Part shown: in pieces, positions 26,013 to 63,821 of the stretch
Numbering within the stretch: the stretch's first letter is position 1
Layout: every line of letters starts with the position of its first letter
IMG/VR virus record: IMGVR_UViG_3300046171_000252
Location: 143,617 to 207,616 of that record
Length of the DNA: 64,000 nt
Strand: one strand, 5' to 3'
Position numbers and translations under genes: made by a program
The notes under the pieces: generated by a model
Database searches by the model: none
Told to the model about the DNA's origin: nothing
Seen by the model: the letters and a program-made list of their open reading frames with translations, nothing else

Positions 26013-26021
26013 GGAGTTCAA

Positions 26022-34078: not shown

Positions 34079-34081
34079 ATT

Positions 34082-37879: not shown

Positions 37880-38988
37880 AAATTGGACTTATTGGTGCAG
37901 GAAGACTTGGTATCTGTCTTGCTCTCTTGATTGAAAGAGCAGGATATGATGTCTTAGTGTCTGATATCAGAGAAGACTACGTTTCTAATCTGAATAAAAA
38001 GAGAATTAATACCAATGAACCGGGGGTCGGATGGTATCTCAAACAAACTGAAAGATTTGAAGCAACCACCGACAATCAACGTGTCATCAATGAGTGTGAT
38101 ATTATAATTTGTCTTGTTGCAACTCCTTCTCTTGATGATGGTTCTTATGATGTAAGTTCTGTCTGGAAAGTTGTTGAAGACTTCAAGAGTTCATCTGCAA
38201 AACTAAGTGGTAAAACTTTTATAGTTGGTTGCACGACAAATCCAGGTGACTGCGAACAATTTGCAGAACAATTAGATTCCTTTGGTATTGATGTTTTCTA
38301 TAATCCAGAGTTTATTGCTCAGGGTTCTGTCATCAAAGATTTGCAGAATGCAGACATGGTTCTGATTGGTGGTGAAGGTAAGTATCTTGAAGAGATTAAA
38401 CAGATCTACTTTAAGATTCAAGTCAGTGCACCAAAAATTTATACGATGAGCACTACTGCTGCCGAACTTGTAAAGTTGGCAGTCAATTGTTATTTGACTA
38501 CTAAGATTTCATATGCCAATATGGTGGGCGAGGTCATGTCTCTGTCCGGAATGGGAGATGAAATAGAAGATGTTTTATCTGCTATTGGTGCTGATAGTCG
38601 TGTCGGGTCTAAGTATCTTAAGTTTGGATATGGGTATGGTGGTCCTTGTCTTCCTAGGGACAATCGTGCCTTTGCTGCTCATGCTAAAAAACTTGGATTG
38701 GAATATAATCTTGGGTCAACCACAGATAAATTTAATACCGAACACAATAAGTTTTTGGTTGACTGGGTAGTTCGCAATAATGAAAAAGAACTTCCTTTTG
38801 CTTTTTCATATGTTTCATACAAAGAAGGAACCGATATTGTAGAAGAAAGTCAACAATATCGTCTATGTCTTGAATTATTAAATCTTGGTTATAAAGTTTA
38901 TGTTGTGGATGATCTTGTAGAATCCCAATGTGATGATAGAATTATTTGGGGAATCCCTTCTGAAGAAGTATTTTGGATTGAATTATGA
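37876..38988 (+). CDS. ugd: UDP-glucose/GDP-mannose dehydrogenase family
   Basis: GAGRLG, YNPEF, AELVKLAVN, GYGGPCLPRD. Confidence 0.88.
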   Translation: MKIGLIGAGRLGICLALLIERAGYDVLVSDIREDYVSNLNKKRINTNEPGVGWYLKQTERFEATTDNQRVINECDIIICLVATPSLDDGSYDVSSVWKVVEDFKSSSAKLSGKTFIVGCTTNPGDCEQFAEQLDSFGIDVFYNPEFIAQGSVIKDLQNADMVLIGGEGKYLEEIKQIYFKIQVSAPKIYTMSTTAAELVKLAVNCYLTTKISYANMVGEVMSLSGMGDEIEDVLSAIGADSRVGSKYLKFGYGYGGPCLPRDNRAFAAHAKKLGLEYNLGSTTDKFNTEHNKFLVDWVVRNNEKELPFAFSYVSYKEGTDIVEESQQYRLCLELLNLGYKVYVVDDLVESQCDDRIIWGIPSEEVFWIEL

Positions 38989-48103: not shown

Positions 48104-48475
48104 ATGCCTCTCTACAATACCTTTCAAGCCTATGTTTTCAATCTCCATACAGCAAAATCATCAGAGGCAAAAAGGTTATGGAGGCAACAGATAAAGGAAG
48201 AATGGGGTTATGAGTGTGCTTATTGTGGGTCTACACATCATCTTACAATAGATCACATCGTTCCAAGAGCCAAAGGTGGCACAGACTTTACTAAAAATTG
48301 TTTGTGTGCCTGTCACAAATGCAATCAAGATAAATCATATTCTCCTATGGAAGATTGGTATCTTTCACAGGAGTTTTTTGATGTTGATAGATATGAAAGG
48401 ATTAAAAACTGGATGAAACCAGAGGACCCTATGAATCTTTATCGTTATGGTTCTAGAACAAATAAGGTCTCTTGA
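48104..48475 (+). CDS. HNH endonuclease (McrA-like)
   Basis: CAYCG...TIDHIVPRAKGG...NCLCACHKCNQDK. Confidence 0.88.
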   Translation: MPLYNTFQAYVFNLHTAKSSEAKRLWRQQIKEEWGYECAYCGSTHHLTIDHIVPRAKGGTDFTKNCLCACHKCNQDKSYSPMEDWYLSQEFFDVDRYERIKNWMKPEDPMNLYRYGSRTNKVS

Positions 48476-48535: not shown

Positions 48536-50762
48536 ATGGCAACACCTATTAGAATTAAAAGGTCAGCTGTTGCTGGCAAGAAACCTACTACCTCAGACTT
48601 ACAGTTAGGCGAATTAGCTGTAAACTTTAATGATGGTAAAGTATTTCTCAAACAGGATACTAGCGGTGTCGGTGTTGGCACAAGAATTGTAGAAGTTGGA
48701 GCAGGAACTACAACTTTTGCCGGTAAGACTTTATTCGTTACTGAGAATGGTAATGATGATAATGATGGACTGAATGAAGGCAATGCAAAAGCAACGATTA
48801 AATCTGCTGTTGCCGCTGCTTCTGAGGGAGATACGGTTAAAGTATTTCCAGGAACATATGTAGAAAATAACCCAATTAATTTACCGGATAATGTTTCCGT
48901 AGAGGGAACTGAACTTCGTCGTTGTGTTGTCACACCACAAAATGGCGGACAAGATTTATTTTATGTTAGTCAAGGATGCCATCTAACAGACCTGAGTTTT
49001 GTTGGTGCTGCCGCAACTAATAATTCTGCTGCTGTTTCTTTCAGACCACTTGCTGGAGTATCATCTGATAGATTCTTTGATGCTGCCAGACTCATCCGTG
49101 AGAATATTGAATTTATTGCAGATGAAACTATTGGATATCTTGAGAGCACTGACTATCAGAATCCTGCAATCAGTGTAGATAATGCTTCTTTCAGAACAAA
49201 CATCAACCACGCAATGCGTTCCACTTGCCACGACATTACAAGAGGTGGCAACTCTAAATCTATTGGTGCTGGTCAATCATACTTCACTGGTGATAGTTTA
49301 ACCTCTGGAATTGGTGCAACACATATTGCTGCTCTGGAGTATTCGGTTGGTATTGCCAGATCATGTATCAACAATATTGGATTCTCAAAAACAAGTGGCG
49401 GAAACTATCAGACAAACTATACTCAGGTCAAGGACTTAAGTATTCAGAGTGATGGTGCATCCTATGATATTGGTAATTGTGCCAATGTTCTTTCGGCAGT
49501 CACTGTCTGTGTCGGTATTGTAACTGGTATTATTCAGAATGGTATTAATGGAGTTGCAGCAGCCACAGGATTCACCACAAACTTCCCTGGCAATAGTGGA
49601 ACAATCAACTCTGGCATTCTGACCGCATCACTGAGTCCTTTACAGGGAACTGGTATTATTACCAAAGGTCCTTACGTTAGAAACTGCACTAACTTTATTC
49701 CTGATAGTATCGGAGCAAGAATAGATGGATTCAATGCTGATGAAGGAGACCAAATAAACAGAATTGGTGTTCAAGGTTCATTCAACGTTGATTCTTATAC
49801 TCAATATAATCAAGGTGGTATCGGAGTTTCGGTAAGTAACGGAGCATATTGTCAGTTAGTTTCGCTCTTCACCATCTGTAATGACATTGCAGTTTCTGCC
49901 AGTGGCGGTGGTCAGTTAGATTTAACTAACTCAAACTCATCTTTCGGATCTCGGGGTCTTATTGCATTTGGTAGATCTGATGAAACATCCAAGGGCATTG
50001 ATCGTTATACAGGAATCGTCACTTCAACTGCCGCAGTAAGTCAGAGTCAGATTGTTGTTAGTGGTGTTGGAAGTAATAGACCCTATGATGGTCAGGCAAT
50101 TTTCTTTGATAGAAAATATAATGTAGTCAGAAAGATTGATATTACGAATGGTGGGTCTGGATATACTTCGGCACCAACTGTGACGGTTGCTGCACCTACT
50201 GGACCCGGAGTTGCCGTTCGTGCAACTGCGAGCGCAACAGTTGAGAATGGTGTTGTTACTGCAGTCAGAATATTAAGTAATGGTTCACAATATGAAGTTG
50301 TTCCTGCCGTCACTTTCTCTGGGGGGTGGTGCAGATGCTGCTGCCACGGCAGTGCTTGATCCAATTTATTATGAAGTTTCCTCGTCAACTGAACCATCTG
50401 CCGGTATCTCAACACTTACTTTGGTTCAGAATCTAAATAATGAAGTTGGAGTTGGATCAACAGCATTCTTTGCCAGACAGAGTTTACAAATTGTAAGTTC
50501 GCATTCATTCCAATACATCGGTGCAGGAAACACTATTGAACTAGCATATCCATCTCAAGGCGGAGTTGTTATTCAAGATAATGAAGTAATTGAAACTGAT
50601 GGTGCAAGAGTTGTATACACGAGCACCGACCAATCTGGTAATTTCAGAATTGGTGATGGTGTTGAAATCAATCAATCAACCGGAACAATATCCGGAAGCA
50701 TTTATGTCAAGAGTTTATTCACACAAGTAACACCATTCATTCTTGCATTAGGAGGAGATTAA
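48536..50762 (+). CDS. tailspike/fibre with beta-helix (pectin-lyase-like) region (apparent +1 error in G6 at 50321)
   Basis: IRIKRS...GELAVN fibre N-terminus; FVTENGND...TIKSA...VFPGTY; second ORF continues GGGADAAAT in shifted frame. Confidence 0.75.
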
Positions 50763-51128: not shown

Positions 51129-54100
51129 ATGGCAGCACCAATTAGATTCCTTAGTGGAAGACAACAACAACAAAAAATTGGTATAGAAGGAAGTACTGAT
51201 AACCAAAAGGTATTAGAGGTTGTTGGTCAGGTTGGTATTGGCACAACAGTTTTTGAACCTTCCGTACAACTAGAAGTTCGCGGTGATGCATCAGTAAGTG
51301 GTGTTCTCACAGCAGGTAGTTTAAATATTACTGGAGATGGTGGTGTTCCTGCCAGTCTGACTGTTGAAACTTTAAATGCTACTGGTGTTTCTACATTTGG
51401 TGGTGCTGTTGATGTAAATGCCGGACTAGATGTAGATGGACAGTCTGATTTAGACGAATTGGTTGTTGCCGGTGTTGCAACCTTTAGTAATGCTGTAGAT
51501 ATTAATAGCACACTAGATGTAGATGGAGATACTCAATTAGATGATCTGAATGTTGCCGGTGTTTCCACATTCAGTTCTGTTGTCAATGCGACAGCTGCCG
51601 TCAATGCGACAGATATAATTAAAGGATACAAATATACTGCTGTTCCTTATGGAAGCACGGTTACACTTGCTGTCACTGTTGCAAGTAAGGATTCCACTCA
51701 CAGATATAATGGAACGGGAAGTGGAAATGGTTATGTAATTGATGGCATTCAGGCTCCATTTCTAACCCTAACACCTGGAAGAACATATAGATTCACGAAC
51801 AATAATACTGGGAGTCATCCTCTTAAGTTTTATCTTGAAGCAGATAAGACGACACTATATGAAACGAATGTTAATTTTCAGGATACATATACTGAAATAA
51901 CAGTAACTGATGAGACTCCAATAGTTCTCCATTATCAATGCACTGCTCATGGATACATGGGTAATGCGGTTCAGACAAATGCAAATGTTGTCAATACAAA
52001 CTATCCGGCAACAATTAGAAGCACCTTAGATGTTTCTGGTGTTTCAACCTTTACACAATTAGATGTCAGCACTGGTGGATTAGATGTTGATGGACTCACT
52101 AATTTAGATGAAGTCGTCGTTGCTGGTGTATCTACCTTTACTGGAAATATCGTTGCTGTTTCGGCAGAATTCAGTGGTAATGTAACGATTGCAGGAACCT
52201 TAACTGCGGAAGATAAGACCAATATAGATTCACTTGGAATTGTAACTGCAAGAACAGGAGTTAGAGTCGATGCTGGTGGTTTAATTGTAACTGCCGGTGT
52301 ATCTACATTCACTGATTCTGTAGACATTAATAATGGTGTTGGTGTAGTTGGTGGATTAACCGCAGATTCTTTAACTATCTCTGGAGTCACCACAGGAATT
52401 AATGCTGCCGGCATTTCATCATTCGTCAGAATAGATGTAGATGGTCAGGCTGATTTAGATGAACTGGTTGTTGCCGGTGTTGCTACATTCCAAGGTGCCG
52501 TTAATTTTGATGTTAATAGTGAAATTAATATTGGAACTGGCGTCACTATACTTGCTAATAACTTACATGTAACTGGTATTGTTTCTGCGGCACAGTTCAT
52601 CGGTGATGGTTCTGGTATTACGAATCTCCCTGGTATTAGTACCGTTGGTTCTTCATCTCTTACTGATGTTAATGTTTCTGGAACAACCACGACTGTTCAG
52701 TTAAGAGTCAGTGGTGTTGGAACTGCAGAAAAATTCTCTGTTAGTACAGGTGGATTTGACGTTGATGGTCAATCAGATCTTGATGAACTGGTTGTTGCCG
52801 GTGTATCAACCTTTAGTGCAAATACTTTTATCAATGCAGACCTTTCTGTCACCGGAGACATTGGTGCATCAGGAATCATTACTGCCACAGGAATTCAGTT
52901 AGTTGCCGGTAGTGGACTTGATGTTGGTGCCGTTGGTGTTCTGACTGCACTTTCAGTAGATGTCAGCACTGGTGGTATTGATGTAGATGGACAAGCAACC
53001 TTAGATGAAGTTGTAGTTGCTGGTGTTGCTACATTCAGTGCTCTTGCAGATGTTAATAATAGATTAGATGTTGCTGGTGGTGCTAATATTGATCAGTTAA
53101 ATGTTGCTGGTATTGCATCCTTCACTCAGTTAGATGTAAGCACTGGTGGTATTGATGTAGATGGACAGGCAACCTTAGATGAAGTTGTAGTTTCCGGTGC
53201 TTCAACATTTACTGGCACAGTTAAGATTGATGGAGCATTAGACATTGGTGTTGCCGGTGTTGATGTAGAGGGACTTACCAACTTAGATGAACTGATTGTT
53301 GCTGGTGTATCCACCTTTAGTAGCACTATTAATGGTAATGTAACTGGTAATCTAACTGGAACTGCATCAAATGCATCAGGTGCAACTGGAGACTTCTCAA
53401 TTGCAGATAAGATTGTTCATACTGGTGACACTAATACTGCTATCAGATTCCCTGCTGCCGATACATTCACTGTAGAGACTGGTGGTAGTGAAAGAGTTCG
53501 TGTAACTTCTGCCGGTAATGTTAATTTCTTAGGAAGTCTTGTTAATGTTAATGCGACTGGAGTTTCATCATTCGTCCAATTAGATGTTAGTACCGGTGGT
53601 TTAGATGTTGATGGACAAACTGATTTAGATGAACTTCAGGTTGCTGGTGTCTCCACATTCTCTGCCAAGGCAGTATTTAATACCGCATACCCATCCATAG
53701 ATGCCGACAATGAAATTCAAGTCGGCACTGCGATTCAACTGGGTAAAGCAGGTGTTATAACTGCAACATCATTCTCTGGTTCTGGTGCTAACCTGACTGG
53801 TATTGCCGCAACGGATCATGTATCCACATTTGACCTGGTTGTTGCCGGTGTCTCTACATTCGTTGGTTTTGCAACCTTTAGAGATGGATTACATGTTACT
53901 GGTGTATCTACCTTCGCTAATGCTGAATTCAATAATGTAACCACAGACTTCAATCTCACTGTTACAGGTTCAGCAGCTCTTAATGGACCTGTTACCCTAG
54001 GTTCGGATACATCAAATAGTATTCACTTCGGGGGTCGCGTTGACACTGGTATTACCCCTAAAGAAGATGATAAATACGATTTAGGTTCTTCCTCCTTGAA

Positions 54101-56594
54101 ATGGAAAGATCTTTATCTTGATGGGACTGCAAATATTGATGGACTAAATGTAACTGGTGTCTCTACATTCAATGATGATGTAAGAATACTTGCTGGTGGA
54201 TTAGATGTTACTGGTGTTGTTACTGCCACATCATTCTCTGGTTCTGGTGCAAACTTAACTGGTATTGGAACTCAAGCTACTAATGTTCAGGCACAATCAT
54301 TAACTGTTGCCGGTATTTCTACATTCAATAATGATGTAATCTTCAATAGTAGTGCAAACATTGTATTTGACAAGTCTGCTGATGCACTTGAGTTTGCGGA
54401 TACTGCAAAGGCAGTCTTTGGTGATAGTGATGACCTACAGATTTATCATAATAGTCATAGTTACATAGACCATGTAGGTGCAAATAACCTTCATATTAGA
54501 AATCAGACTGCTGACCAAGATATAACCATTCAGACTGATGATGGTTCTGGTAATCTTGCCACTTACTTCCAAGCTGAAGGTGCTAGTGGTAAAGCTTCAC
54601 TTCATTTCTACGGTGCTAAAAAACTTGCTACCAATACTGGTGGAATAGATGTTACTGGTGGCGTTAATGCAACTGGTGTCATAACTGCCACATCATTTGC
54701 TGGTGATGGTTCTGCACTGACCGGTATTGCCGCAACGGCCCATGTATCCACATTTGACCTAGTTGTTGCCGGTATATCCACATTCAATGATGATGTAAGA
54801 ATTACTGCTGGTGGCATTAATGCTGCAGGTGTTGTAACTGCCACCTCATTCTCTGGTTCTGGTGCAAACTTAACTAGTGTTGATGCCGCCACTCTGGATG
54901 GTGTTGACTCTACTTCCTTCCTTCGCAGTGATGCTGCTGACATTAAGACCTCTGGTAATCTAACATTTAATGATAATATTAAAGCTAGATTTGGTACTAG
55001 TAGTGACCTTGAGATTTACCATAATGGTACTGACTCTCACATCTCGAACACTAACGGTACTTTATACATCGATCAGGGCGTTGATGACACTGAGCTCGTT
55101 CTGAGATGCGACAATGGTTCTGGTGGATTAACGCAGTATATCCAATTGAATGGCGGTAATGGTGAAGTAAGACTTTATCATAACACTGGAGGTTTTGATG
55201 CAAAATTATCAACCAAATCTAGTGGAATAGATGTTAATGGTGGCGTTAATGCAACTGGTGTTATAACTGCCACATCATTCTCTGGTTCTGGTGCTAACCT
55301 GACTGGTATTGGAACGCAAGCTACTAATGTTCAGGCACAATCATTAACTGTTGCCGGTGTATCTACATTCAATGATGATGTAAGAATTACTGCTGGTGGT
55401 ATTAATGTTAGTGGTGTTTCAACATTCTCTGGAATTGCGACTCACATTGATACTTTACATGGACAAACATTAAAGATTGCCGGTGTTTCTACATTCCATG
55501 ATGCGGTTACAATAACAAAAGCATTAAATGCTTTAAATGTTAATGTTTTAACCACAAATCCCGCTATTAACATACAAAGAGATGGAACTACAAAAGGAAG
55601 TATTACGCCAGCATATGGTGAGTTTAGAGTACAAACAAGCAGTTCTGAAGATTTAGCACTTCAAGTAAATTCTTCTGGTGGAACTACTGGTGAAATATTT
55701 TTGAAGAGCAGTTCTCGCGAAATTCTTAAGGCGAGTCATAATGGTGGAGTTGCAGTTTCTGGAATTATTACCGCAACGGCAATTAATGTAGTTGCAGGTA
55801 GTGGACTAGATGCTGGTAATACTGGTGTTATTACTGCCACATCATTTGTTGGTGATGGTTCTGCACTGACCGGTATTGCTGCTGGTGGATCAGGAGAGTT
55901 TAATACTGGAATTACAAGTTCTAGGCAAATTGTTCCACTATCTTTTGAGTCAACGGTATTTACTTTCCCATCAACAGCAGGTAAACAATATGTAATTGAG
56001 TCTATTAATGTTGCGAATGTTGATGAGTCTGTTGGTGTCGGAACAACAGTTAATATTATCGCATCAATTCAGGATGCAACAGCAGGAGAACAAACTTATA
56101 TTGCTTATAATGTTCCTATCGTAACTGGTGGTTTGATTGAATTACTTAAGAATCCAATTGTTGCCGGTCCATCGGATGTAATTAGGATGTGGTCTACAAA
56201 TGATGCATATGTCGGAGTCAATAATGCCGCAGATGTTTATATGAATTTCACCGAACATAGTGATAGTACTGACTTTATTAGTAAGTTTGCCTCTACCGCA
56301 TCCGTTACTAGTACTGATACAACCACCCTATATACATCAACTTCTAATCCAACTGTAATTGAAAAAATTGGACTTGCAAATAGAACCGATATTGGTGATT
56401 TCCCAATTTCTATTAAAATTACAAACGGAACATCAACATCTTATCTTGCCAAAGATTTAATCATACCAAGATACTCTACTGTGGATATATTGGATAGACA
56501 AAAGAGAATTGAGACTGGTGCTAAAATTGAAGTTGAGGTTGGATCAACATCAACAATTGATATTATTATTGCCGGTAAGAAAATAACATCCTGA
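51129..56594 (+). CDS. long tail fibre-like protein (1821 aa)
   Basis: dozens of LxVAGVSTF / GVITATSFSGSG shaft repeats with inserted globular domains. Confidence 0.85.
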   Translation: MAAPIRFLSGRQQQQKIGIEGSTDNQKVLEVVGQVGIGTTVFEPSVQLEVRGDASVSGVLTAGSLNITGDGGVPASLTVETLNATGVSTFGGAVDVNAGLDVDGQSDLDELVVAGVATFSNAVDINSTLDVDGDTQLDDLNVAGVSTFSSVVNATAAVNATDIIKGYKYTAVPYGSTVTLAVTVASKDSTHRYNGTGSGNGYVIDGIQAPFLTLTPGRTYRFTNNNTGSHPLKFYLEADKTTLYETNVNFQDTYTEITVTDETPIVLHYQCTAHGYMGNAVQTNANVVNTNYPATIRSTLDVSGVSTFTQLDVSTGGLDVDGLTNLDEVVVAGVSTFTGNIVAVSAEFSGNVTIAGTLTAEDKTNIDSLGIVTARTGVRVDAGGLIVTAGVSTFTDSVDINNGVGVVGGLTADSLTISGVTTGINAAGISSFVRIDVDGQADLDELVVAGVATFQGAVNFDVNSEINIGTGVTILANNLHVTGIVSAAQFIGDGSGITNLPGISTVGSSSLTDVNVSGTTTTVQLRVSGVGTAEKFSVSTGGFDVDGQSDLDELVVAGVSTFSANTFINADLSVTGDIGASGIITATGIQLVAGSGLDVGAVGVLTALSVDVSTGGIDVDGQATLDEVVVAGVATFSALADVNNRLDVAGGANIDQLNVAGIASFTQLDVSTGGIDVDGQATLDEVVVSGASTFTGTVKIDGALDIGVAGVDVEGLTNLDELIVAGVSTFSSTINGNVTGNLTGTASNASGATGDFSIADKIVHTGDTNTAIRFPAADTFTVETGGSERVRVTSAGNVNFLGSLVNVNATGVSSFVQLDVSTGGLDVDGQTDLDELQVAGVSTFSAKAVFNTAYPSIDADNEIQVGTAIQLGKAGVITATSFSGSGANLTGIAATDHVSTFDLVVAGVSTFVGFATFRDGLHVTGVSTFANAEFNNVTTDFNLTVTGSAALNGPVTLGSDTSNSIHFGGRVDTGITPKEDDKYDLGSSSLKWKDLYLDGTANIDGLNVTGVSTFNDDVRILAGGLDVTGVVTATSFSGSGANLTGIGTQATNVQAQSLTVAGISTFNNDVIFNSSANIVFDKSADALEFADTAKAVFGDSDDLQIYHNSHSYIDHVGANNLHIRNQTADQDITIQTDDGSGNLATYFQAEGASGKASLHFYGAKKLATNTGGIDVTGGVNATGVITATSFAGDGSALTGIAATAHVSTFDLVVAGISTFNDDVRITAGGINAAGVVTATSFSGSGANLTSVDAATLDGVDSTSFLRSDAADIKTSGNLTFNDNIKARFGTSSDLEIYHNGTDSHISNTNGTLYIDQGVDDTELVLRCDNGSGGLTQYIQLNGGNGEVRLYHNTGGFDAKLSTKSSGIDVNGGVNATGVITATSFSGSGANLTGIGTQATNVQAQSLTVAGVSTFNDDVRITAGGINVSGVSTFSGIATHIDTLHGQTLKIAGVSTFHDAVTITKALNALNVNVLTTNPAINIQRDGTTKGSITPAYGEFRVQTSSSEDLALQVNSSGGTTGEIFLKSSSREILKASHNGGVAVSGIITATAINVVAGSGLDAGNTGVITATSFVGDGSALTGIAAGGSGEFNTGITSSRQIVPLSFESTVFTFPSTAGKQYVIESINVANVDESVGVGTTVNIIASIQDATAGEQTYIAYNVPIVTGGLIELLKNPIVAGPSDVIRMWSTNDAYVGVNNAADVYMNFTEHSDSTDFISKFASTASVTSTDTTTLYTSTSNPTVIEKIGLANRTDIGDFPISIKITNGTSTSYLAKDLIIPRYSTVDILDRQKRIETGAKIEVEVGSTSTIDIIIAGKKITS

Positions 56595-56606: not shown

Positions 56607-59600
56607 ATGGGAATAAGAAATGATGTATTTGGTTTAGAGCAGATTTACCAACTGCAGATAGAAGGGCAATGGTCCACGAAAGGAGATGTCTGGTTAACTC
56701 CGAGTCCTTTTGGTGCTCAGGCTCCTTTTGGTTACTTTAGTGGTGGTTCTAGTAATAGATCAGTAGTACAACGTATTGATTATTCTAATGATACAGCAAC
56801 GGCATCGGTAAGAGGGCCATTAAGTGCTGGTAGATATAATCATGCAGCAACAGGTAATGCTAATTTTGGATACCATAGTGGTGGTAGTCCTGCAAAATCA
56901 ACAGTAGAACGTATTGATTATGGTAATGATACTGCCACGTCATCACCAAAAGGGCCATTAAGTGCTGGTAGAAGAAACTTATCGGCAACAGGTAATGCTT
57001 CTTTTGGTTACTTTGGTGGTGGTAGTCCTGCTCCAAAAACAACAATAGATCGTATTGATTATTCTAATGACACCGCAACGGCAGCAGTCAAAGGACCATT
57101 AAGTTCTGCTAGATATTGGTCAGCGGCAGCAGGTAATGCTTCATTTGGTTACTTTGGTGGTGGATATATTGATAATACTCCTACAAAATCAACAGTAGAC
57201 CGTATTGATTATTCTAATGACACCGCAACAGCAGCAGTAAAAGGACCATTAAGTGTTGCTAGATATCGACTGGCAGCAACAGGCAATTCTTCTTTTGGAT
57301 ACTTTGGTGGTGGCAATGGTCCATTATCATCAGTAGACCGTATTGATTATAGTAATGACACCGCAACGGCAGCAGCAAAAGGACCATTGAGTGCTGCTAG
57401 ATATTCTATAGCAGCAACAGGTAATGCTTCCTTTGGATACTTTAGTGGTGGTTATGATAAAACATTAGTAGACCGTATTGATTATTCTAATGATACTGCA
57501 ACAGCAGCAGTCAAAGGACCGTTAAATTATGACTATATTAAAACTGCGGCATCAAGTCCTAAGGCAAATGCAGTCACAGGTTTAACAGTACTCTCAGCAT
57601 CATCACCAGCAAGAGAAAATGTAGTCCCACAAGGAACTGACTTTGGTTACTTTGGTGGTGGACGTAATCCAGCTGGATCTGGTACTGTATCAACAGTAAA
57701 CCGTATTGATTACTCAAATGATACAGCAACTGCATCAACAAAAGGACCATTAAGTAGTGCTAGATATAATGTTGCAGCAATAGGTAATGCTCCATTTGGA
57801 TACTTTGCTGGTGGTAATCCTTCAAGTGCAGTATCCACAGTAGACCGTATTGATTACTCTAATGACACCGCAACAGCAGCAGTCAAAGGACCATTAAGTG
57901 CTACTAGTGATGGTGCTGCTACTGTAGGCAATTCTGATTTTGGTTATTTTGCTGCTGCTGGTAATAAATCAACAGTAGACCGTATTGATTATACTAATGA
58001 CTCTGCAACGGCATTAGTCAGAGGACCATTAAGTTATTCAAGTTATGGTAGGGCAGGAACAGGTAATGCTGATTTTGGATATATTGGTGGAGGTGGTCCT
58101 ACATTATCAACAGTAAATCGTATTGATTATTCTAATGATACGGCAACGGCATCACCTAAAGGACCATTAAGTCTTGCTAGACGTACTATGGGAGCAACAG
58201 GTAATAGTTCTTTCGGATACTTTGGTGGTGCTTTCCCCGGTCCATATTCAACAGTAGACCGTATTGATTACTCCAATGATACTGCCACGGCATCAGTAAA
58301 AGGACCACTAAGTTCTGCTAGAGGTCAATTTGTAGCAACAGGTAATGCTTCCTTTGGTTACTTTGGTGGTGGATATGATGATAATCCCAATCAAACATCA
58401 ACAGTAGACCGTGTTGATTATTCTAATGACACCGCAACGGCAGTAGTCAAAGGACCATTAAGTGAAAAGATTCAGAACCATGCAGCATCAAGTTCCAGAG
58501 CAAATGCAATACCACTCAAAGGACCTGGTAGCTTAGAAGTTCCAATATCATTGGGTGCTTTTAGTCGTAATTTTGGACCACAAGGAACTGACTTTGGATA
58601 CTTTGGTGGTGGTGGTCCTGCTCCAAAATCAACAATAAACCGTATTGATTATTCTAATGACATGGCAACGACAGCAGTCAAAGGACCATTAGATGTTGCT
58701 AGAGCTTACTTAGCAGCAACCGGTAATCAAAACTTTGGTTACTTTGGTGGTAGTGTTGGTCCAAAATCATCAGTAGAACGTATTGATTATACTAATGATA
58801 CTGTAGAAGCATCACCAAAAGGACCATTGAGTGTTGCTAGATATTCTTTGGCAGCAACAAGTAATTCTTCCTTTGGTTACTTTGGTGGTGGAGGTCCTGG
58901 CCCATTCTCAACAGTAGATCGTATTGATTATTCTAATGATACTGCAACGGCATCAGTCAAAGGACCATTGAGTGTTGCTAGACATGGTTTGGCAGCAACA
59001 AGTAATTCTTCCTTTGGTTACTTTGGTGGAGGTATGCCTGGTAGTATTTCAACAGTAGATCGTATTGATTATTCAAATGATACCGGAACAACACCAACAA
59101 AAGGACCATTGAGTGCTGCTAGAAGATACTTGGGAGCAACGGGTAATGCCGACTTCGGTTACTTTGGTGGTGGAGGTCCTGGTAGTATTTCAACAGTAGA
59201 TCGTATTGATTATACTAATGATACTGCAACGGCATCAGTCAAAGGACCATTGAGTTATGGTAGAGATAACATAGCAGCAACGGGTAATGCTAATTTTGGT
59301 TATTTTGCTGCTGGTCCTAGTCCCAGTGCTGCATTATCAACAGTAGACCGTGTTGATTACTCTAATGACACCGCAACAGCATCAGTAAGAGGACCATTAA
59401 GTGTTAATAACTATGCTATGGGAGCAACAAGTTCCAGAGCCAATGGAATTCCGACTGAAAATATTGTAAATTATGCGGCAGGAACTCTAGGGACTCCTAA
59501 CACCGGTTACTTTGGTGGTGGTGAACCCGGATACATATCATTTGTAGAACGTATTGATTACTCTAATGACTCCGCATCGCCAGTAACAAAAGGACCATTA

Positions 59601-61376
59601 AGTGCTGGTAAATCTTTTATGGGAGCAACAAGTAGTGGTTCCTTTGGTTACTTTGGTGGTGGTTATGCAACATCAATTGGTAATCAATCAACAGTAGACC
59701 GTATTAGTTACCTAAACGATACTACAACGGCAGTAGTAAAAGGTCCATTGACTGGTGTTAAAGATGAATTAACAGCAACAGGCAATGCTTCCTTTGGATA
59801 CTTTGGTGGTGGACAATTGAATGGTTCTACTACACAAACAACAATAGACCGTGTTGATTTTTCTAATGATAGTGCCAATGCCGTAGCAAAAGGACCATTA
59901 AGTGTTGCTAGATATGGTTTGGCAGCAACCGGTAATCAAAACTTTGGTTACTTTGGTGGTGGTGGTCCTGGTTTTAAAAGCACAGTAGATCGTATTGATT
60001 ATTCCAATGATACGGCAAATGCATCACCAAAAGGGCCATTAAGTGCTGGTAGATATCGACTTGCAGCAACAGGTAATGCTTCCTTTGGTTATTTTGGTGG
60101 TGGTCGTAAATCACCTGGTGCGACAGTAGTATCAACAGTAGACCGTATTGATTATTCGAGTGATACTGAAACGGCAGTAGTAAAATCACCATTGCTTGTT
60201 GTTAAATTTGCTCATGCAGCAACTGGTAGTGCTGACTTTGGTTACTTCGGTGGTGGTGCTCCTGGACCATTATCAACAATAGACCGTATTGATTATTCTA
60301 ATGACACCGCAGCATTATCGGCAAAAGCGCCATTTACTTCTGGAAATGGTTATAGGAAGGAATTAACAGCAACAAGTGCCAGAGCAAACGGATTCGGTCA
60401 AATATCGGGTCAAATATTAGGTCCAGCACTGGTTTCTAATGCCGATGCAGTCGCAGGGTCATTTAATCCAACAACGTTTGGTTACTTTGGTGGTGGTCGC
60501 ACTACTCCTTCTGATATGTCAACAGTAGACCGTATTGATTACTCCAATGATACTGCCACGGCATCAGTCAAAGGACCATTAAGTCTTGCTAGAAAGCAAC
60601 TAGGTGCAGTAGGAAATTCATTTTTTGGATATTTTACGGGTGGTGAAACTCCTTCTGTAGTATCAAATGTAGACCGTATTGATTACTCCAATGACACCGC
60701 AACGGCAGTAGAAAAAGGACCATTAAGTGCTCCTAGAAGATATGGTGCCAATGCCGGTAATTCTGATCATGGATATTGGGTTGGTGGACTTACTCCTGGT
60801 ACTACATTAGCATCATTAGTAGATCGTATTGATTACTCTAATGACACTCCAACGACATTAGAAAGAGGACCATTGAGTCTTGCTAGAGCTATTCTAAGTG
60901 GAACTGGCAATGCTGACTTTGGTTACTTTGGTGGTGGTAATGTTCCTTCTCCTAGTGTCACATACTCTACAGTAGACCGTATTGATTATGCTAATGACAC
61001 TGCAACGGCAGTAGCAAAAGGACCATTAAGTGTTGGTAAATATGGTTCAGCAGCAACAGGTAATGCTTCATTTGGTTACTTTGCTGGTGGTTATACTCCT
61101 AGTGATCTTTCATCAGTAGATCGTATTGATTATTCTAACGACACCGCAACAGCATCACCAAAAGGACCATTGAGTCTTGCCAGAGATCAATTGGGAGCAA
61201 CAGGTAATGCTTCATTTGGTTACTTTGCTGCTGGTGCTACTTCTAGTGCAGTAACAACAGTAGACCGCATTGATTACTCTAATGACACTGCAACAGCACC
61301 GGCAAAAGGACCACTAAGTGTTGGTAGATGGACTCTAGCAGGAACCTCAGCAGCAGCAAATGCACTTCCACAATAG
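56607..61376 (+). CDS. Kelch-like multi-beta-propeller protein (1589 aa, 30 repeats)
   Basis: ~46-aa repeat GYFGGG-x-STVDRIDYSNDTATAxxKGPLSxxRxxxAATGN in five blocks of six. Confidence 0.85.
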   Translation: MGIRNDVFGLEQIYQLQIEGQWSTKGDVWLTPSPFGAQAPFGYFSGGSSNRSVVQRIDYSNDTATASVRGPLSAGRYNHAATGNANFGYHSGGSPAKSTVERIDYGNDTATSSPKGPLSAGRRNLSATGNASFGYFGGGSPAPKTTIDRIDYSNDTATAAVKGPLSSARYWSAAAGNASFGYFGGGYIDNTPTKSTVDRIDYSNDTATAAVKGPLSVARYRLAATGNSSFGYFGGGNGPLSSVDRIDYSNDTATAAAKGPLSAARYSIAATGNASFGYFSGGYDKTLVDRIDYSNDTATAAVKGPLNYDYIKTAASSPKANAVTGLTVLSASSPARENVVPQGTDFGYFGGGRNPAGSGTVSTVNRIDYSNDTATASTKGPLSSARYNVAAIGNAPFGYFAGGNPSSAVSTVDRIDYSNDTATAAVKGPLSATSDGAATVGNSDFGYFAAAGNKSTVDRIDYTNDSATALVRGPLSYSSYGRAGTGNADFGYIGGGGPTLSTVNRIDYSNDTATASPKGPLSLARRTMGATGNSSFGYFGGAFPGPYSTVDRIDYSNDTATASVKGPLSSARGQFVATGNASFGYFGGGYDDNPNQTSTVDRVDYSNDTATAVVKGPLSEKIQNHAASSSRANAIPLKGPGSLEVPISLGAFSRNFGPQGTDFGYFGGGGPAPKSTINRIDYSNDMATTAVKGPLDVARAYLAATGNQNFGYFGGSVGPKSSVERIDYTNDTVEASPKGPLSVARYSLAATSNSSFGYFGGGGPGPFSTVDRIDYSNDTATASVKGPLSVARHGLAATSNSSFGYFGGGMPGSISTVDRIDYSNDTGTTPTKGPLSAARRYLGATGNADFGYFGGGGPGSISTVDRIDYTNDTATASVKGPLSYGRDNIAATGNANFGYFAAGPSPSAALSTVDRVDYSNDTATASVRGPLSVNNYAMGATSSRANGIPTENIVNYAAGTLGTPNTGYFGGGEPGYISFVERIDYSNDSASPVTKGPLSAGKSFMGATSSGSFGYFGGGYATSIGNQSTVDRISYLNDTTTAVVKGPLTGVKDELTATGNASFGYFGGGQLNGSTTQTTIDRVDFSNDSANAVAKGPLSVARYGLAATGNQNFGYFGGGGPGFKSTVDRIDYSNDTANASPKGPLSAGRYRLAATGNASFGYFGGGRKSPGATVVSTVDRIDYSSDTETAVVKSPLLVVKFAHAATGSADFGYFGGGAPGPLSTIDRIDYSNDTAALSAKAPFTSGNGYRKELTATSARANGFGQISGQILGPALVSNADAVAGSFNPTTFGYFGGGRTTPSDMSTVDRIDYSNDTATASVKGPLSLARKQLGAVGNSFFGYFTGGETPSVVSNVDRIDYSNDTATAVEKGPLSAPRRYGANAGNSDHGYWVGGLTPGTTLASLVDRIDYSNDTPTTLERGPLSLARAILSGTGNADFGYFGGGNVPSPSVTYSTVDRIDYANDTATAVAKGPLSVGKYGSAATGNASFGYFAGGYTPSDLSSVDRIDYSNDTATASPKGPLSLARDQLGATGNASFGYFAAGATSSAVTTVDRIDYSNDTATAPAKGPLSVGRWTLAGTSAAANALPQ

Positions 61377-61410: not shown

Positions 61411-62064
61411 ATGGGTATAATGATCGCACTCCCCTGTCACGGGGGAATTGTGAATGAAAAGACAACTATGAGTTTGTTTAATCTAGGCAAACTCTTAGTA
61501 AGAAATAATATTCCGCACGGTCTTCTCACTCAGGCAAACTCTTCCTTGATTACTCATGGAAGGTCTAAGTGTGCTAACTTTTTTATCAACAATACAGATC
61601 ATGAATATTTGTTTTTCCTTGATAGTGATATTGGATTTAATCCAGAAGATGTGCTAAGATTACTGAGTCATAATGAAAACATTGTTTCTGGCACATATCC
61701 AATGAAGACAATACCCATTCGGTATTGTGCTGATGTTCTTCAACCAGAAGAACGCAAGGGTGATTTACTCAAGGTTGGTGGAAATGGTATGGGATTTGTG
61801 ATGATTCATCGCAATGTCTTTGCCAATATCGCACAGAAGTTTCCATATCTTAAATACATACCATCAACTAAAGATAGTAATTATCCACCAACAGAAGCAG
61901 AGATGAATAACTCATATCATTACTTTGCAGAAGAAAAGATTGATGACAGTTTTGCATCAGAGGATAAAAGTTTCTTTTATCGTGCTAGAATGTCGGGGTA
62001 TACTCATTGGCTAGATACTACAATCAAATTACAACACGTCGGTTCACACGTCTTTACTGAATAA
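61411..62064 (+). CDS. GT-A fold glycosyltransferase-like
   Basis: IALPCHGG, FFLDSDIGF, GMGFVMIHR, SEDKSFF, LQHVG. Confidence 0.75.
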   Translation: MGIMIALPCHGGIVNEKTTMSLFNLGKLLVRNNIPHGLLTQANSSLITHGRSKCANFFINNTDHEYLFFLDSDIGFNPEDVLRLLSHNENIVSGTYPMKTIPIRYCADVLQPEERKGDLLKVGGNGMGFVMIHRNVFANIAQKFPYLKYIPSTKDSNYPPTEAEMNNSYHYFAEEKIDDSFASEDKSFFYRARMSGYTHWLDTTIKLQHVGSHVFTE

Positions 62065-62066
62065 TT

Positions 62067-63821
62067 ATGAAATCTGGTTCAACCGAAACTGCATATCATT
62101 TCCTTGCAGAACATTATCAATTTCCTGAAGATATTGAAGTAACTCATTTTCCAGAGGAACTGAAAAAATCTGACAAAAAATATAAAATTCTCTGGGCACA
62201 TCATGCATATGATCAACCAGTGTTTATTAATTTTGACCATAAAACAGTAGATCATATTGTTACGCCATCACACTGGGCAAAAGAAAATATTGTTAAATAT
62301 CACAATGTTCCGAAGGATAAAGTTACAGTAATTCCAACAGGTGTTTCTGACAAATTTACTTTCTCAGAAAATAAAACAAAAACTTTTATTCATACTTCTG
62401 TTCCTTATAAAGGTTTAGAATTAATGCCTGAAATTATTAGGAGAATTCATCAGAAACATCCAGATGCAAAGTTTAAAATCTTTTCATCAATGTCATTATA
62501 TGGTCAACAGAATGATCCTTATATTGAATTATATGAGGAGTTGAAGAAACTTCCTAATGTAGAATACTCTGCGGCAGTCGATCAAGAAGAATTGATTGAG
62601 TGCTATCAAGAATCTGCATTTTTTATTCATCCAAATATTTGGGAGGAAGTTTTCTGTGTTTCTATGGCAGAGGCAATGAAATGTGGTACATATCCAATTA
62701 TCACAAATATAGGAGCACTCTCCGAAGTTGCCGGTGATAACTTTGCTTCGGTTGTTCCTATTGATGGAACCCGAACACCCGCAAAATATGAAGTTACTGA
62801 AACCTTTCTAAATACATTTGCAGAGATTTGCTGTACTGCTTTAGATTATTTTGAGGGAGACAGAACATATTATAACCAAATCTCAAAATCTCTTTCTAAT
62901 CATATTTCACAGAAGTGTGACTGGAAAAAAATTGCACACCAGTGGAAAAAACTGATTACTAAAATTACAAGTGGAGAACCCATGACTACAGAAAACACTG
63001 AACTGTCTTATAATCCCGTCACTTCTGAGCAGGCAGTGATGGATGATGAATATCTTCAGCAAGCATTTGCCAATGTTCTGAGATGGGAAGATAGTGATAA
63101 GGAACTTGCACAGGGCAGAACTAATTTCCAGTTAGAAAAGTTTGCACTTCTTGATACTCATACCCTTCCTGTTGCCTTTGAGAACACTCTGAAGTCTCGT
63201 CGTCAGATGGCAGAGGGTTATATGTACAAACTCATTGAGATGAAAGAAAAGGTCCGTGAGTTTGACTTTAAGTGGGCAGATAAGGATAAAGCACAACCAA
63301 TTTTTTGGGAAGAAGGTGGACCCGGTGGTGGTTCCAAGAAACTGTGTTGGTTTGATTTAGATGAACTTACACTGTCTCATTATCTGAAGTCTTCTGAACT
63401 TGAGATTCGTGATCGTCTTCACCAGATGCAACATCTAGATAAGATTCTTGATAAATTGATGGAAAAGAATGATGGCAAACCAGTCACCCGAGAACAATTC
63501 CTTGATGCTGATGGGCAGTATTGGGAAAGAAGATTTGCCGATCAGGCTATGGATGAAATGATCGCGGCACAAACTGGCATCTCTATTGGTAACCTACACA
63601 GTATGCGTCGTGCTTCTGCACCTGCAATTGTTGATAAGAGAAATGAACTGCCAGAAGGTTATATGCCTCTGAATAAGATTCTTGAAAGTCCTCAAGGTAA
63701 GATGGACTTCCTGAATGATCTGCAGAAGAAAGTTCTCACAGGTATCCAAGAAGTTACTGGTGAAAATCTTGGTATGATTTCCGGTTCTCCAGAAGAGGAG
63801 CAAAAGAAACTCCAAGGTTGA
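62067..63821 (+). CDS. GT4-like glycosyltransferase fused to helical C-terminal domain
   Basis: HPNIWEEVFCVSMAEAMKCG...IGALSEV GT-B motif; helical second half from M at 62982. Confidence 0.8.
   Translation: MKSGSTETAYHFLAEHYQFPEDIEVTHFPEELKKSDKKYKILWAHHAYDQPVFINFDHKTVDHIVTPSHWAKENIVKYHNVPKDKVTVIPTGVSDKFTFSENKTKTFIHTSVPYKGLELMPEIIRRIHQKHPDAKFKIFSSMSLYGQQNDPYIELYEELKKLPNVEYSAAVDQEELIECYQESAFFIHPNIWEEVFCVSMAEAMKCGTYPIITNIGALSEVAGDNFASVVPIDGTRTPAKYEVTETFLNTFAEICCTALDYFEGDRTYYNQISKSLSNHISQKCDWKKIAHQWKKLITKITSGEPMTTENTELSYNPVTSEQAVMDDEYLQQAFANVLRWEDSDKELAQGRTNFQLEKFALLDTHTLPVAFENTLKSRRQMAEGYMYKLIEMKEKVREFDFKWADKDKAQPIFWEEGGPGGGSKKLCWFDLDELTLSHYLKSSELEIRDRLHQMQHLDKILDKLMEKNDGKPVTREQFLDADGQYWERRFADQAMDEMIAAQTGISIGNLHSMRRASAPAIVDKRNELPEGYMPLNKILESPQGKMDFLNDLQKKVLTGIQEVTGENLGMISGSPEEEQKKLQG

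What the first reader, a model, noticed from the sequence alone, without database searches (positions are those of the whole stretch)
51650..51970. Amicyanin-like type-1 copper motif inserted in a tail fibre
A globular insert carries GSHPLKF and, 40 aa later, YQCTAHGYMGN. The C-x2-H-x2-M loop matches amicyanin (CTPHPFM) with an upstream His, giving a full His/Cys/His/Met blue-copper ligand set. A Cu-binding or redox domain on a virion fibre would be a copper analogue of the iron 'Ferrojan horse' idea.
Basis: partly seen in the sequence, partly recalled or inferred. Interest (0 to 1): 0.65.

Follow-up and report, generated by a model that had tools for sequence, protein, structure and literature searches.

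The report
Blue-copper-type domain on phage tail fibre
A marine cyanophage tail-fibre protein carries a small side domain with the fold and the fully conserved His/Cys/His/Met metal site of blue copper proteins. The domain belongs to a very large, apparently undescribed family in marine phage fibres, so these virions probably carry a metal (likely copper) centre of unknown purpose.

Summary
Residues about 176-286 of an 1821-aa tail-fibre protein (window 51129-56594, +) form a globular insert between shaft repeats. It carries H230 (GSHPLKF) and C271-x2-H274-x2-M277.

The bare motif is not rare by chance. Its meaning comes from four results:
- All four residues are invariant in 174/174 distinct homologous domains. 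They are also intact in 9 cultured marine phages (Prochlorococcus, Synechococcus, SAR11 and OM43 hosts; myo- and podoviruses).
- A family profile finds only copper cupredoxins in the PDB (nitrite reductase E 4e-4).
- Cys sits at the end of the penultimate strand, and His and Met in the last loop, as in type-1 copper sites.

The family has about 9,700 cluster representatives and is almost wholly viral. Copies occur 1 to 25 per protein, usually not at the distal tip. A trimer model puts three domains on the side of the shaft, with the ligands off the interface.

Best reading: a type-1-copper-type, metal-stabilised decoration or adhesion module. Copper occupancy and any redox role are untested. 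A "copper Trojan horse" is unsupported. Known fold, new context; no paper found.

The parts
51129..56594 (+). Tail-fibre gene, 1821 aa (P0001). It is a Thr/Gly/Val/Ala/Ser-rich repetitive shaft protein of a T4-like cyanomyovirus.
   Evidence: ORF. phrog_30742 'tail fiber protein' E 1e-61, plus other tail-fibre and baseplate PHROGs. Shaft repeats. The genome is a complete 207.6-kb virus record with petE, talC and purM.
51654..51986 (+). Cupredoxin-fold domain, aa about 176-286, inserted between shaft repeats.
51816..51818 (+). H230, the candidate N-terminal His ligand (in GSHPLKF).
   Evidence: Invariant in 174/174 copies. Aligns with the type-1 Cu His of nitrite reductase 6hbe and with the ligand His of the phage's own plastocyanin. 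Lies just before strand 73-76 of the model.
51939..51959 (+). Ligand loop C271-T-A-H274-G-Y-M277 (C-x2-H-x2-M).
   Evidence: C, H and M are each invariant in 174/174 copies and in 14/14 named loci. Cys is the last residue of strand 107-112, and His and Met lie in the loop before the last strand 120-124. The loop aligns to CSIHPYM and CTLHPWM of fused cupredoxin domains in 6hbe and 9cck, and to the pseudoazurin loop.
51687..51734 (+). Conserved loop K187...H191-R192-Y193-x-G-x-G-S198...Y202, the probable docking surface of the domain on the shaft or a neighbouring chain.
   Evidence: Conservation of 94% or more at K187, H191, R192, Y193, G195, G197, S198 and Y202. Residues 190-192 and 204-220 are among the few domain residues at the inter-chain interface of the trimer model.
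51441..51653 (+). Shaft repeats upstream of the domain (aa about 105-175), which form the intertwined trimer interface.
   Evidence: Repeat motifs at aa 114-148. Continuous inter-chain contacts over 105-175 in the homotrimer model: ipSAE 0.91 against a best control of 0.00.
51987..52205 (+). Shaft repeats downstream of the domain (aa about 287-359), where the trimer interface resumes.
   Evidence: Repeat motifs at aa 303-337. Continuous inter-chain contacts over 287-359.

Best explanation
The region encodes a true cupredoxin-fold domain with an intact type-1 ('blue') copper-type metal site: H230, C271, H274 and an axial M277 on an amicyanin-length C-x2-H-x2-M loop. It is built as a side module into the trimeric shaft of a cyanomyovirus tail fibre.

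Each fibre would carry three such knobs. They dock on the shaft through the conserved HRY loop and the 204-220 segment, and the metal-site loops lie off the interface.

The domain belongs to a very large, essentially phage-restricted family of cassette-like modules. These occur in fibre, baseplate-connector and podovirus tail-fibre proteins of marine phages.

Most likely mechanism (inferred): the site binds a metal, copper being favoured by the ligand chemistry. The metal locks the ligand loops and stabilises a rigid, exposed beta-sandwich. That sandwich then acts as a general shaft decoration or accessory adhesion module, not as the host-specific receptor-binding tip.

Shown here: the fold, the ligand set, its invariance, the family's size and distribution, and the domain's position in the protein. 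Inferred: metal occupancy, metal identity and function.
For: - Ligands: H/C/H/M are invariant in 174/174 distinct domain copies and in the 49-sequence alignment A1. They are intact in P-TIM68, P-SSM2, Bellamy, S-B68, S-TIM5, P-GSP1, Melnitz, Mosig and Baldr, and in 5 marine SAG/MAG loci. C271 is the only Cys in the domain, and one of two in 1821 aa.
- Sequence homology: the A1 profile against the PDB gives copper proteins as its top three hits: Cu nitrite reductase 6hbe E 4e-4, multicopper oxidase 4kns E 1e-3 and pseudoazurin E 0.067. Ligand residues align with ligand residues.
- A family member, P0124, passes Pfam's own cut-off for PF00127 Copper-bind (23.5 against 21.2 bits). JGI named two members 'plastocyanin'.
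- Fold: the AF2 model has pLDDT 87.7 and pTM 0.82. Foldseek's top hits are rusticyanin, two-domain laccases, plastocyanin, amicyanin and pseudoazurin carrying an amicyanin loop, with probabilities up to 1.0.
- The fold does not need the ligands. Degenerate copies without them exist in giant multi-repeat proteins (P0122: 25 copies, none with the full ligand set). Their strict retention in the fibre module therefore points to selection on the site itself.
- Module behaviour: there are 1 to 25 copies per protein at variable positions, with only 17 of 361 in the last fifth. The domain stays 90-98% identical in fibres whose flanks are 30-60% identical.
- Geometry: the homotrimer model of aa 100-360 scores ipSAE 0.91 against a best control of 0.00, with 93% or more contact agreement between runs and partner pLDDT of 94 or more. 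That mark was reached by 21 of 30 proteins solved as pairs and 0 of 23 solved as single chains; the calibration used two copies, so the counts hold only roughly. The interface is the shaft plus residues 190-192 and 204-220, and does not include 230, 271, 274 or 277.
Against: - P0001's own domain has no Pfam or NCBIfam hit.
- Profile-profile comparison with the phage's own plastocyanin family is not significant (E 0.15-0.17).
- I could not read model coordinates, so the ligand geometry was not measured.
- Cupredoxins normally acquire copper outside the cytoplasm. This domain has no export route and must fold in the host cytoplasm, where free copper is scarce (general knowledge). It may therefore hold zinc, be loaded only after lysis, or be partly empty.
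- No binding partner or ligand for an adhesion role was identified. The functional assignment rests on position and analogy.
Confidence: 0.8

Rival explanations
1. Same fold and site, but the metal in the virion is not copper. The site is filled with Zn(II) or another abundant cytoplasmic ion, or is loaded only after release. It serves purely as a structural clamp with no blue-copper spectroscopy or redox chemistry.
For: The protein is assembled in the cytoplasm and has no signal peptide. The phage's real plastocyanin does have one, which shows where this phage expects copper loading to happen. From general knowledge, type-1 sites such as azurin's readily take up Zn when expressed in E. coli, and T4 fibre proteins use cytoplasmic Fe and Zn as structural ions. 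The domain lies on the conserved shaft part, not the tip.
Against: A soft Cys-thiolate plus Met-thioether set kept invariant in 174/174 copies is the hallmark of copper. Purely structural zinc sites usually use Cys4, Cys2His2 or His3. The axial Met is dispensable for Zn, yet it never varies.
Confidence: 0.3
2. A redox-active virion copper centre used in infection. The fibre cupredoxin would exchange electrons with, or sense the redox or light state of, the host surface, gating fibre deployment or adsorption.
For: The intact type-1 site with axial Met is the classic electron-transfer design. In the trimer model the ligands are not buried in the interface. The module is spread across marine phages of unrelated hosts, which suggests a role tied to environment or physiology and not to one receptor.
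Against: No redox partner is known on the outer surface of Prochlorococcus, SAR11 or OM43. There is no second metal site: residue 270 next to the Cys is Gln, not His, so there is no nitrite-reductase- or laccase-type link to a catalytic copper. Some repeats lose the ligands without losing the domain. Nothing here tests electron transfer.
Confidence: 0.1
3. A 'copper Trojan horse'. The fibre would display copper as bait for a host copper-uptake receptor, or would deliver or sequester copper at a biogeochemically relevant scale.
For: It is only an analogy with the Ferrojan-horse hypothesis for iron in T4-type fibres. The family is very abundant in marine viromes (9,701 cluster representatives).
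Against: The domain is rarely at the distal tip (17 of 361) and sits in the conserved proximal 600 aa. A type-1 copper is buried under a protein loop and is not presented like a chelate. From general knowledge, the hosts include Prochlorococcus and SAR11, which largely lack TonB-dependent metal-chelate receptors. About 18 atoms per virion at about 1e6 phages per mL is roughly 0.03 pM, against about 1 nM dissolved copper (my estimate).
Confidence: 0.04
4. The conserved Cys, His and Met have a non-metal role (catalytic Cys/His, thioester or other covalent adhesion chemistry), or the motif is a chance match on an ordinary Ig-like fibre domain.
For: The bare C..H..M motif is expected about 1.9 times per window by chance. 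There is no direct Pfam hit for this copy. Beta-sandwich decoration domains are common on phage fibres.
Against: Four residues invariant together, at exactly the positions and topology of type-1 sites, on a fold whose structural neighbours are almost all cupredoxins. Cys and His three residues apart cannot form a protease dyad geometry typical of known families. Thioester adhesin domains have a different fold and a distant Gln partner (general knowledge).
Confidence: 0.04

Closest known systems
Amicyanin (methylotroph blue copper protein)
   Same: Cupredoxin fold, His + Cys-x2-His-x2-Met ligand set, and the shortest natural ligand-loop length. A pseudoazurin carrying the amicyanin loop (2ux6) is among the Foldseek matches.
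   Different: Amicyanin is a soluble periplasmic electron carrier of about 105 aa. There is no closer sequence kinship than to other cupredoxins (amicyanin is rank 22). The phage loop lacks amicyanin's two prolines (CTAHGYM against CTPHPFM). His230 is followed by Pro, not Asn.
N-terminal type-1 Cu cupredoxin domain of three-domain nitrite reductase (H. denitrificans, 2dv6/6tfd), and domain 1 of nitrite reductases and two-domain laccases
   Different: The phage domain has no His next to the Cys and no second (type-2 or type-3) copper ligand set, so there is no catalytic site. It is a single domain inserted in a fibrous protein.
Cyanophage plastocyanin PetE (this phage has its own copy just upstream of the window)
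   Same: A phage-encoded type-1 copper protein of the same superfamily. The ligand His, Cys and His align.
   Different: PetE is a 107-aa secreted protein with a signal peptide and the longer C-x2-H-x4-M loop. It is a photosynthetic auxiliary gene, not a virion part. The profile comparison is not significant (E about 0.15), so the fibre domain is not a recent petE copy.
Metal ions in T4-type fibres (gp37 His-x-His iron sites, the basis of the 'Ferrojan horse' hypothesis)
   Same: A metal bound within a phage tail fibre that is assembled in the cytoplasm.
   Different: The T4 sites lie on the three-fold axis, are built from His of all three chains, and are part of the shaft itself. Here the site is inside one globular side domain and uses Cys and Met chemistry typical of copper.
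Ig-like and other beta-sandwich decoration domains on phage structural proteins (for example T4 Hoc, and Big/FN3 inserts in tail fibres)
   Same: A cassette-like beta-sandwich module inserted at variable positions and copy numbers in virion surface proteins and spread among unrelated phages. This is the behaviour the proposed accessory-adhesion role rests on.
   Different: Those domains carry no conserved metal site.
Copper-free cupredoxin-fold binding domains (ephrins, plant early-nodulin-like phytocyanins)
   Same: They show that the fold can serve as a surface binding module. Ligand-less copies of the phage family (P0122) resemble this state.
   Different: The copy in this window and nearly all single-copy fibre domains keep all four ligands.

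Membership tests
Cupredoxin superfamily (fold) | Greek-key beta-sandwich of 7-9 strands that is structurally superposable on known cupredoxins | tested here: met
Type-1 (blue) copper site | One upstream His, plus Cys, His and Met (or another axial residue) clustered on the loop between the last two strands | tested here: met
   H230 precedes strand 73-76. C271 ends strand 107-112, and H274 and M277 lie in the loop before strand 120-124. All four are invariant in 174/174 copies and 14/14 named loci. They align to the ligands of solved copper proteins.
Type-1 (blue) copper site | The four ligand side chains converge within bonding distance of one metal position | not testable with these tools
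Only ranges and secondary structure are returned.
Type-1 (blue) copper site | Copper occupancy, the absorbance band near 600 nm, and small parallel hyperfine splitting in EPR | not testable with these tools
   This needs protein or virions.
Pfam PF00127 Copper-bind (plastocyanin/azurin family) | Score above the family's gathering cut-off | tested here: inconclusive
   P0001's domain has no hit. Three of 49 A1 members hit weakly (best E 0.014). The multi-copy relative P0124 passes (23.5 against 21.2 bits). hhalign against the phage petE family gives E 0.15 with the ligands aligned.
Soluble electron-carrier cupredoxins (amicyanin, plastocyanin, pseudoazurin) | A small free-standing protein exported to the periplasm or thylakoid lumen | tested here: not met
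   The domain is internal (aa 176-286 of 1821) to a virion fibre protein with no signal peptide. The phage's real PetE has one.
Copper nitrite reductase / multicopper oxidase | His adjacent to the type-1 Cys (H-C or H-C-H), plus further His ligands for a catalytic type-2 or type-3 copper | tested here: not met
   Residue 270 is Gln in 166/174 copies, and the residues after the Cys are Thr/Ser. No further invariant His exists: H191 is 94% and H268 85% conserved, and both are replaced by Tyr.
Phage tail fibre | Homology to fibre families, repetitive trimer-forming shaft, and location in a structural gene cluster | tested here: met
   phrog_30742 E 1e-61, and the neighbours match phrog_17885 tail fibre. 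Shaft repeats are shown. The homotrimer model scores ipSAE 0.91 against controls at 0.00. Homologues in cultured phages are annotated as tail fibre or virion structural protein. Presence in this phage's virion was not tested.

The most novel reading that the evidence does not exclude
Marine phage virions routinely carry redox-active blue copper centres on their fibres, and these take part in infection. They might sense the redox or light state of the host surface, or trigger fibre deployment. That would be the first electron-transfer cofactor known to work as part of a virus particle, present across about 10,000 protein clusters of ocean phages.
Probability: 0.12. Interest if true: 0.9.

Novelty: new variant of a known kind. 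Interest (0 to 1): 0.66.

Why it matters
Cupredoxins are textbook soluble or enzyme-bound electron carriers. A version with a fully conserved type-1 site, built into virion fibres and spread over thousands of marine phage lineages, would add a new structural context for the fold. These phages infect the ocean's dominant bacteria: Prochlorococcus, Synechococcus, SAR11 and OM43.

It also raises a directly testable question: do virus particles carry copper, and what for? Several carrier phages are in culture (P-SSM2, P-TIM68, Bellamy, Melnitz, Mosig), so metal analysis, spectroscopy and ligand mutants are feasible now.

The full-text searches run here found no paper that describes it. Automatic pipelines have occasionally labelled members 'plastocyanin'. 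Even the sober reading, a metal-stabilised decoration module, defines a large unannotated domain family for phage fibre annotation.

Tried and rejected
- Pfam and NCBIfam on the single domain gave no meaningful hit.
- phmmer of the single domain against the PDB gave only chance antibody hits. The profile was needed.
- hhalign of the family against the phage's own plastocyanin, alone and as a 47-sequence low-diversity cyanophage alignment, was not significant (E 0.15-0.17), although the ligands align. I therefore dropped the idea that the fibre domain is a recent petE derivative.
- Motif statistics: the bare motif is not rare, so I dropped 'the motif alone proves it'.
- Second copies in the same genome: none. 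There is only a weak ligand-less relic in a 2641-aa ORF.
- Cellular homologues: the scan of 185,579 species genomes found 5 loci, all marine SAG/MAG contigs that look phage-derived. Only one peptide pattern was used, so distant cellular relatives are not excluded.
- A nitrite-reductase- or laccase-like catalytic site at the trimer interface was rejected: there is no His beside the Cys and no invariant extra His, and the ligands are off the interface.
- Thioester or protease chemistry for the lone Cys was rejected on fold and spacing.
- Model coordinates are not exposed, so ligand distances could not be measured.
- Literature: seven full-text searches and two papers read found nothing on cupredoxin or plastocyanin-like domains in phage fibres.
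Full report
**What is there**

The finding lies inside one long ORF, window 51129-56594 (+), which encodes 1821 aa (P0001). The window is the last 64 kb of a complete 207.6-kb virus record. That genome encodes plastocyanin, transaldolase and PurM, and its nearest nucleotide matches are cyanomyoviruses. It is therefore a T4-like cyanophage.

P0001 matches the PHROG 'tail fiber protein' family phrog_30742 (E 1e-61). It sits in a cluster with other fibre-like genes. Most of the protein is a Thr/Gly/Val/Ala/Ser-rich shaft built from repeats of the type LDVDG...LDElvVAGVSTF.

- H230 in GSHPLKF.
- C271, H274 and M277 in YQCTAHGYMGN, with 41 residues from His to Cys.

**Is it more than chance?**

The bare C-x2-H-x2-M pattern is not rare. 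It occurs twice in the six frames of the window, against 1.9 in shuffles. With an upstream His in the same open frame the count is 1, against 0.1 expected. The weight comes from elsewhere.

The protein has only two Cys and four Met in 1821 residues. I collected 174 distinct copies of the domain from 120 database proteins and 60 viral contigs. H230, C271, H274 and M277 are invariant in all 174, down to about 25-30% identity. The only other fully invariant positions are F222, P264 and Y269.

The same four residues, at the same spacing, are intact in every cultured phage carrying the domain that I checked:
- Prochlorococcus phages P-TIM68, P-SSM2 and P-GSP1.
- Synechococcus phages Bellamy, S-B68 and S-TIM5.
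- OM43 phage Melnitz.
- SAR11 phages Mosig and Baldr.

They are also intact in five marine single-cell or metagenome-assembled contigs.

**Fold and homology**

The single sequence has no Pfam, NCBIfam or PDB match. A profile of 49 diverse copies (A1) gives copper proteins as its top three PDB hits:
- Cu nitrite reductase 6hbe, E 4e-4.
- Multicopper oxidase type 1 (4kns), E 1e-3.
- Pseudoazurin, E 0.067.

In these alignments H230 lies on the type-1 His. The Cys-His-Met loop lies on the ligand loops, including CSIHPYM and CTLHPWM of fused cupredoxin domains that have the same short spacing. A multi-copy relative, P0124, passes Pfam's own cut-off for PF00127 Copper-bind. JGI's pipeline named two members 'plastocyanin'.

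The AlphaFold2 model built on A1 is confident (pLDDT 87.7, pTM 0.82). It is an all-beta sandwich of nine strands. Cys is the last residue of the penultimate long strand, and His and Met sit in the loop before the final strand. The upstream His sits just before the fourth main strand. This is the canonical type-1 layout.

The structure searches agree:
- Foldseek against the PDB returns rusticyanin, two-domain laccases, plastocyanin, amicyanin, pseudoazurin and nitrite reductases. E-values are modest (from 1.6e-3) but probabilities reach 1.0.

Each Z taken singly is 'middling'. The uniformity of the lists, the sequence-profile hits and the ligand pattern together make the cupredoxin assignment firm.

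Comparison with the phage's own PetE is not significant (E about 0.15), although the ligand His, Cys and His align. The fibre domain is therefore an old, separate branch and not a recent petE copy.

**The family**

A full HMMER scan of 1.84 billion cluster representatives finds 9,701 proteins at E of 1e-3 or better, and 6,217 at 1e-10 or better. Copies occur one to 25 times per protein.

Among the domain hits in the best 150 proteins, 184 carry His/Cys/His/Met. Some giant multi-repeat proteins hold degenerate copies without the ligands; P0122 has 25 copies and none with the full ligand set. The fold therefore survives without the site. This makes the strict retention of the site in fibre modules a sign of selection on the site itself.

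Structure-based searches of viral and metagenomic models find the domain in several contexts:
- Cyanophage tail fibres and baseplate-wedge/tail-fibre connectors.
- Proteins with T7-type tail-fibre N-termini and with Mtd_N.
- Small 'beta-sandwich proteins' of metagenomic giant viruses.

A scan of 185,579 prokaryotic species genomes found only five loci, all in marine SAGs or MAGs. That scan used a single peptide pattern, so distant cellular relatives are not excluded.

The module lies anywhere along its host proteins but seldom in the last fifth (17 of 361). In relatives of P0001 the N-terminal 600 residues, including the domain, are conserved, while the C-terminal half is mosaic. In some fibres the domain stays 90-98% identical although both flanks are only 30-60% identical. 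It behaves as a cassette in the proximal or shaft part, not as the variable receptor-binding tip.

**Placement on the fibre**

A homotrimer prediction for residues 100-360 gives these figures:
- ipSAE 0.91, against a best control of 0.00.
- Runs agree in at least 93% of contacts, and partner pLDDT is at least 94.
- The mark was reached by 21 of 30 proteins solved as pairs and by 0 of 23 solved as single chains. The calibration used two copies, so these counts hold only roughly here.

The continuous inter-chain interface covers residues 105-175 and 287-359, which are the shaft repeats. Within the domain, only residues 178, 180, 190-192, 204-220, 238, 261, 266 and 279-285 touch other chains.

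This explains the second conserved feature, the K187...H191-R192-Y193-x-G-x-G-S loop, as a docking surface. It also leaves the four ligands off the interface. The model supports three side knobs per fibre but does not prove them.

**How it most likely works**

Shown: a cupredoxin domain with a complete type-1-type ligand set under strong purifying selection, displayed on the shaft of a phage fibre.

Inferred: the site is metal-occupied. The thiolate plus thioether plus two imidazoles point to copper. The metal ties the two ligand loops together and stabilises a rigid exposed module. That module serves as a general decoration or accessory adhesion element, as Ig-like inserts do on other phages.

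The main caveat comes from general knowledge. Cupredoxins normally receive copper after export, whereas fibres fold in the cytoplasm. Zinc occupancy, or loading after lysis, is a serious alternative.

A redox or sensing role cannot be excluded, but it has no partner and no second metal site: Gln, not His, precedes the Cys.

The 'copper Trojan horse' idea is the least supported:
- The domain is not at the tip.
- A type-1 copper is not presented like a chelate.
- From general knowledge, key hosts largely lack TonB-type metal-chelate receptors.
- By my rough estimate, about 18 atoms per virion amounts to about 0.03 pM, against about 1 nM dissolved copper.

**Comparison with known systems, and novelty**

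The domain works like, and by fold and ligands belongs to, the cupredoxin superfamily with a type-1 site. It shares loop length with amicyanin, but no special kinship. It fails the defining features of soluble carriers (free-standing, exported) and of nitrite reductases and multicopper oxidases (extra copper ligands).

It differs from the T4 fibre iron sites, which are axial His-x-His sites shared by three chains.

Seven full-text searches and two papers read found no description of a cupredoxin or plastocyanin-like module in phage fibres. The Melnitz paper does not mention it.

I rate it a new variant of a known kind: a known fold and site in a new structural context, and a large domain family without its own Pfam, NCBIfam or PHROG domain model among the libraries searched here.

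**Limits**

Model coordinates could not be read, so the ligand geometry is unmeasured. Metal content, colour and function need experiments.

Noticed in passing
window 21904-38988 (+): A run of about 20 co-oriented ORFs of about 230-370 aa. The nine I sampled include NAD-dependent epimerase/dehydratases, GT17 and GT92/GT2 glycosyltransferases, SAM methyltransferases, a 2OG-Fe(II) oxygenase and a UDP-glucose/GDP-mannose dehydrogenase (one had no hit). This is a large sugar or glycan modification cluster inside a cyanophage. Two more glycosyltransferase-like genes lie at 61411-63821.
   Followed up: partly
window 48536-50359 and 50280-50762 (+): Two ORFs overlap by 80 nt in different frames. They match the N-terminal (4-356) and C-terminal (855-1001) parts of the same tail-fibre family, phrog_17885. 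This may be a frameshifted, split or recoded fibre gene directly upstream of the cupredoxin-bearing fibre.
   Followed up: no
window 48104-48475 (+): A small HNH endonuclease gene lies between transaldolase and the fibre cluster. The surrounding about 410 nt are 83% identical to Synechococcus phage S-SKS1, the only sizeable nucleotide match of this 10-kb stretch to any deposited phage. It is probably a mobile homing element.
   Followed up: no
outside the window: G000:C1:72295-80217 (+), aa 535-625 of a 2641-aa ORF: A weak match (E 0.03) of the family profile to a segment that keeps the framework residues but has none of the four ligands. It may be a degenerate, metal-free copy in another giant structural protein of the same phage.
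   Followed up: partly
outside the window: G000:C1:142789-143112 (L061:1429-1752): The phage's own plastocyanin gene (petE, 107 aa, with a signal peptide and a C-x2-H-x4-M loop) lies about 500 bp upstream of the window start. The genome therefore encodes two unrelated-looking type-1-copper-type proteins.
   Followed up: yes
P0122 (3815 aa), P0131, P0228 (database proteins): Giant proteins with 13-25 tandem copies of the domain, most lacking the ligands. Their origin (phage, giant virus or cell) was not determined.
   Followed up: partly
L145 (Pelagibacterales SAG-MED28, 275-kb contig, match at 4001-4402 of the locus): A SAR11 single-cell genome contig carries a gene with an intact His/Cys/His/Met domain about 7-15 kb from one contig end. 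It could be a prophage, an infecting phage or a chimeric assembly.
   Followed up: no
BFVD hits to model m46f4a734506d: Stand-alone 'Beta-sandwich proteins' of 124-133 aa from metagenomic Pithovirus, and longer ones (169-425 aa) from Marseillevirus, match the model at E about 1e-8 to 2e-6 (TM up to 0.75 by target). The fold family may therefore extend to giant viruses. The ligand status of these proteins is unknown.
   Followed up: no
Pfam PF25489 (At5g54830-like domain): Seven of 49 family members hit this plant-named family weakly, and P0124 passes its cut-off (29.5 against 27 bits). This hints at a link between the phage module and a domain of eukaryotic cytochrome b561/DOMON proteins.
   Followed up: no
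window 56607-61376 (+): The 1589-aa ORF directly downstream of the fibre matches phrog_19111 (unknown function) in five repeated stretches (E 7e-263). It is another large repetitive, probably structural, protein with no assigned role.
   Followed up: no
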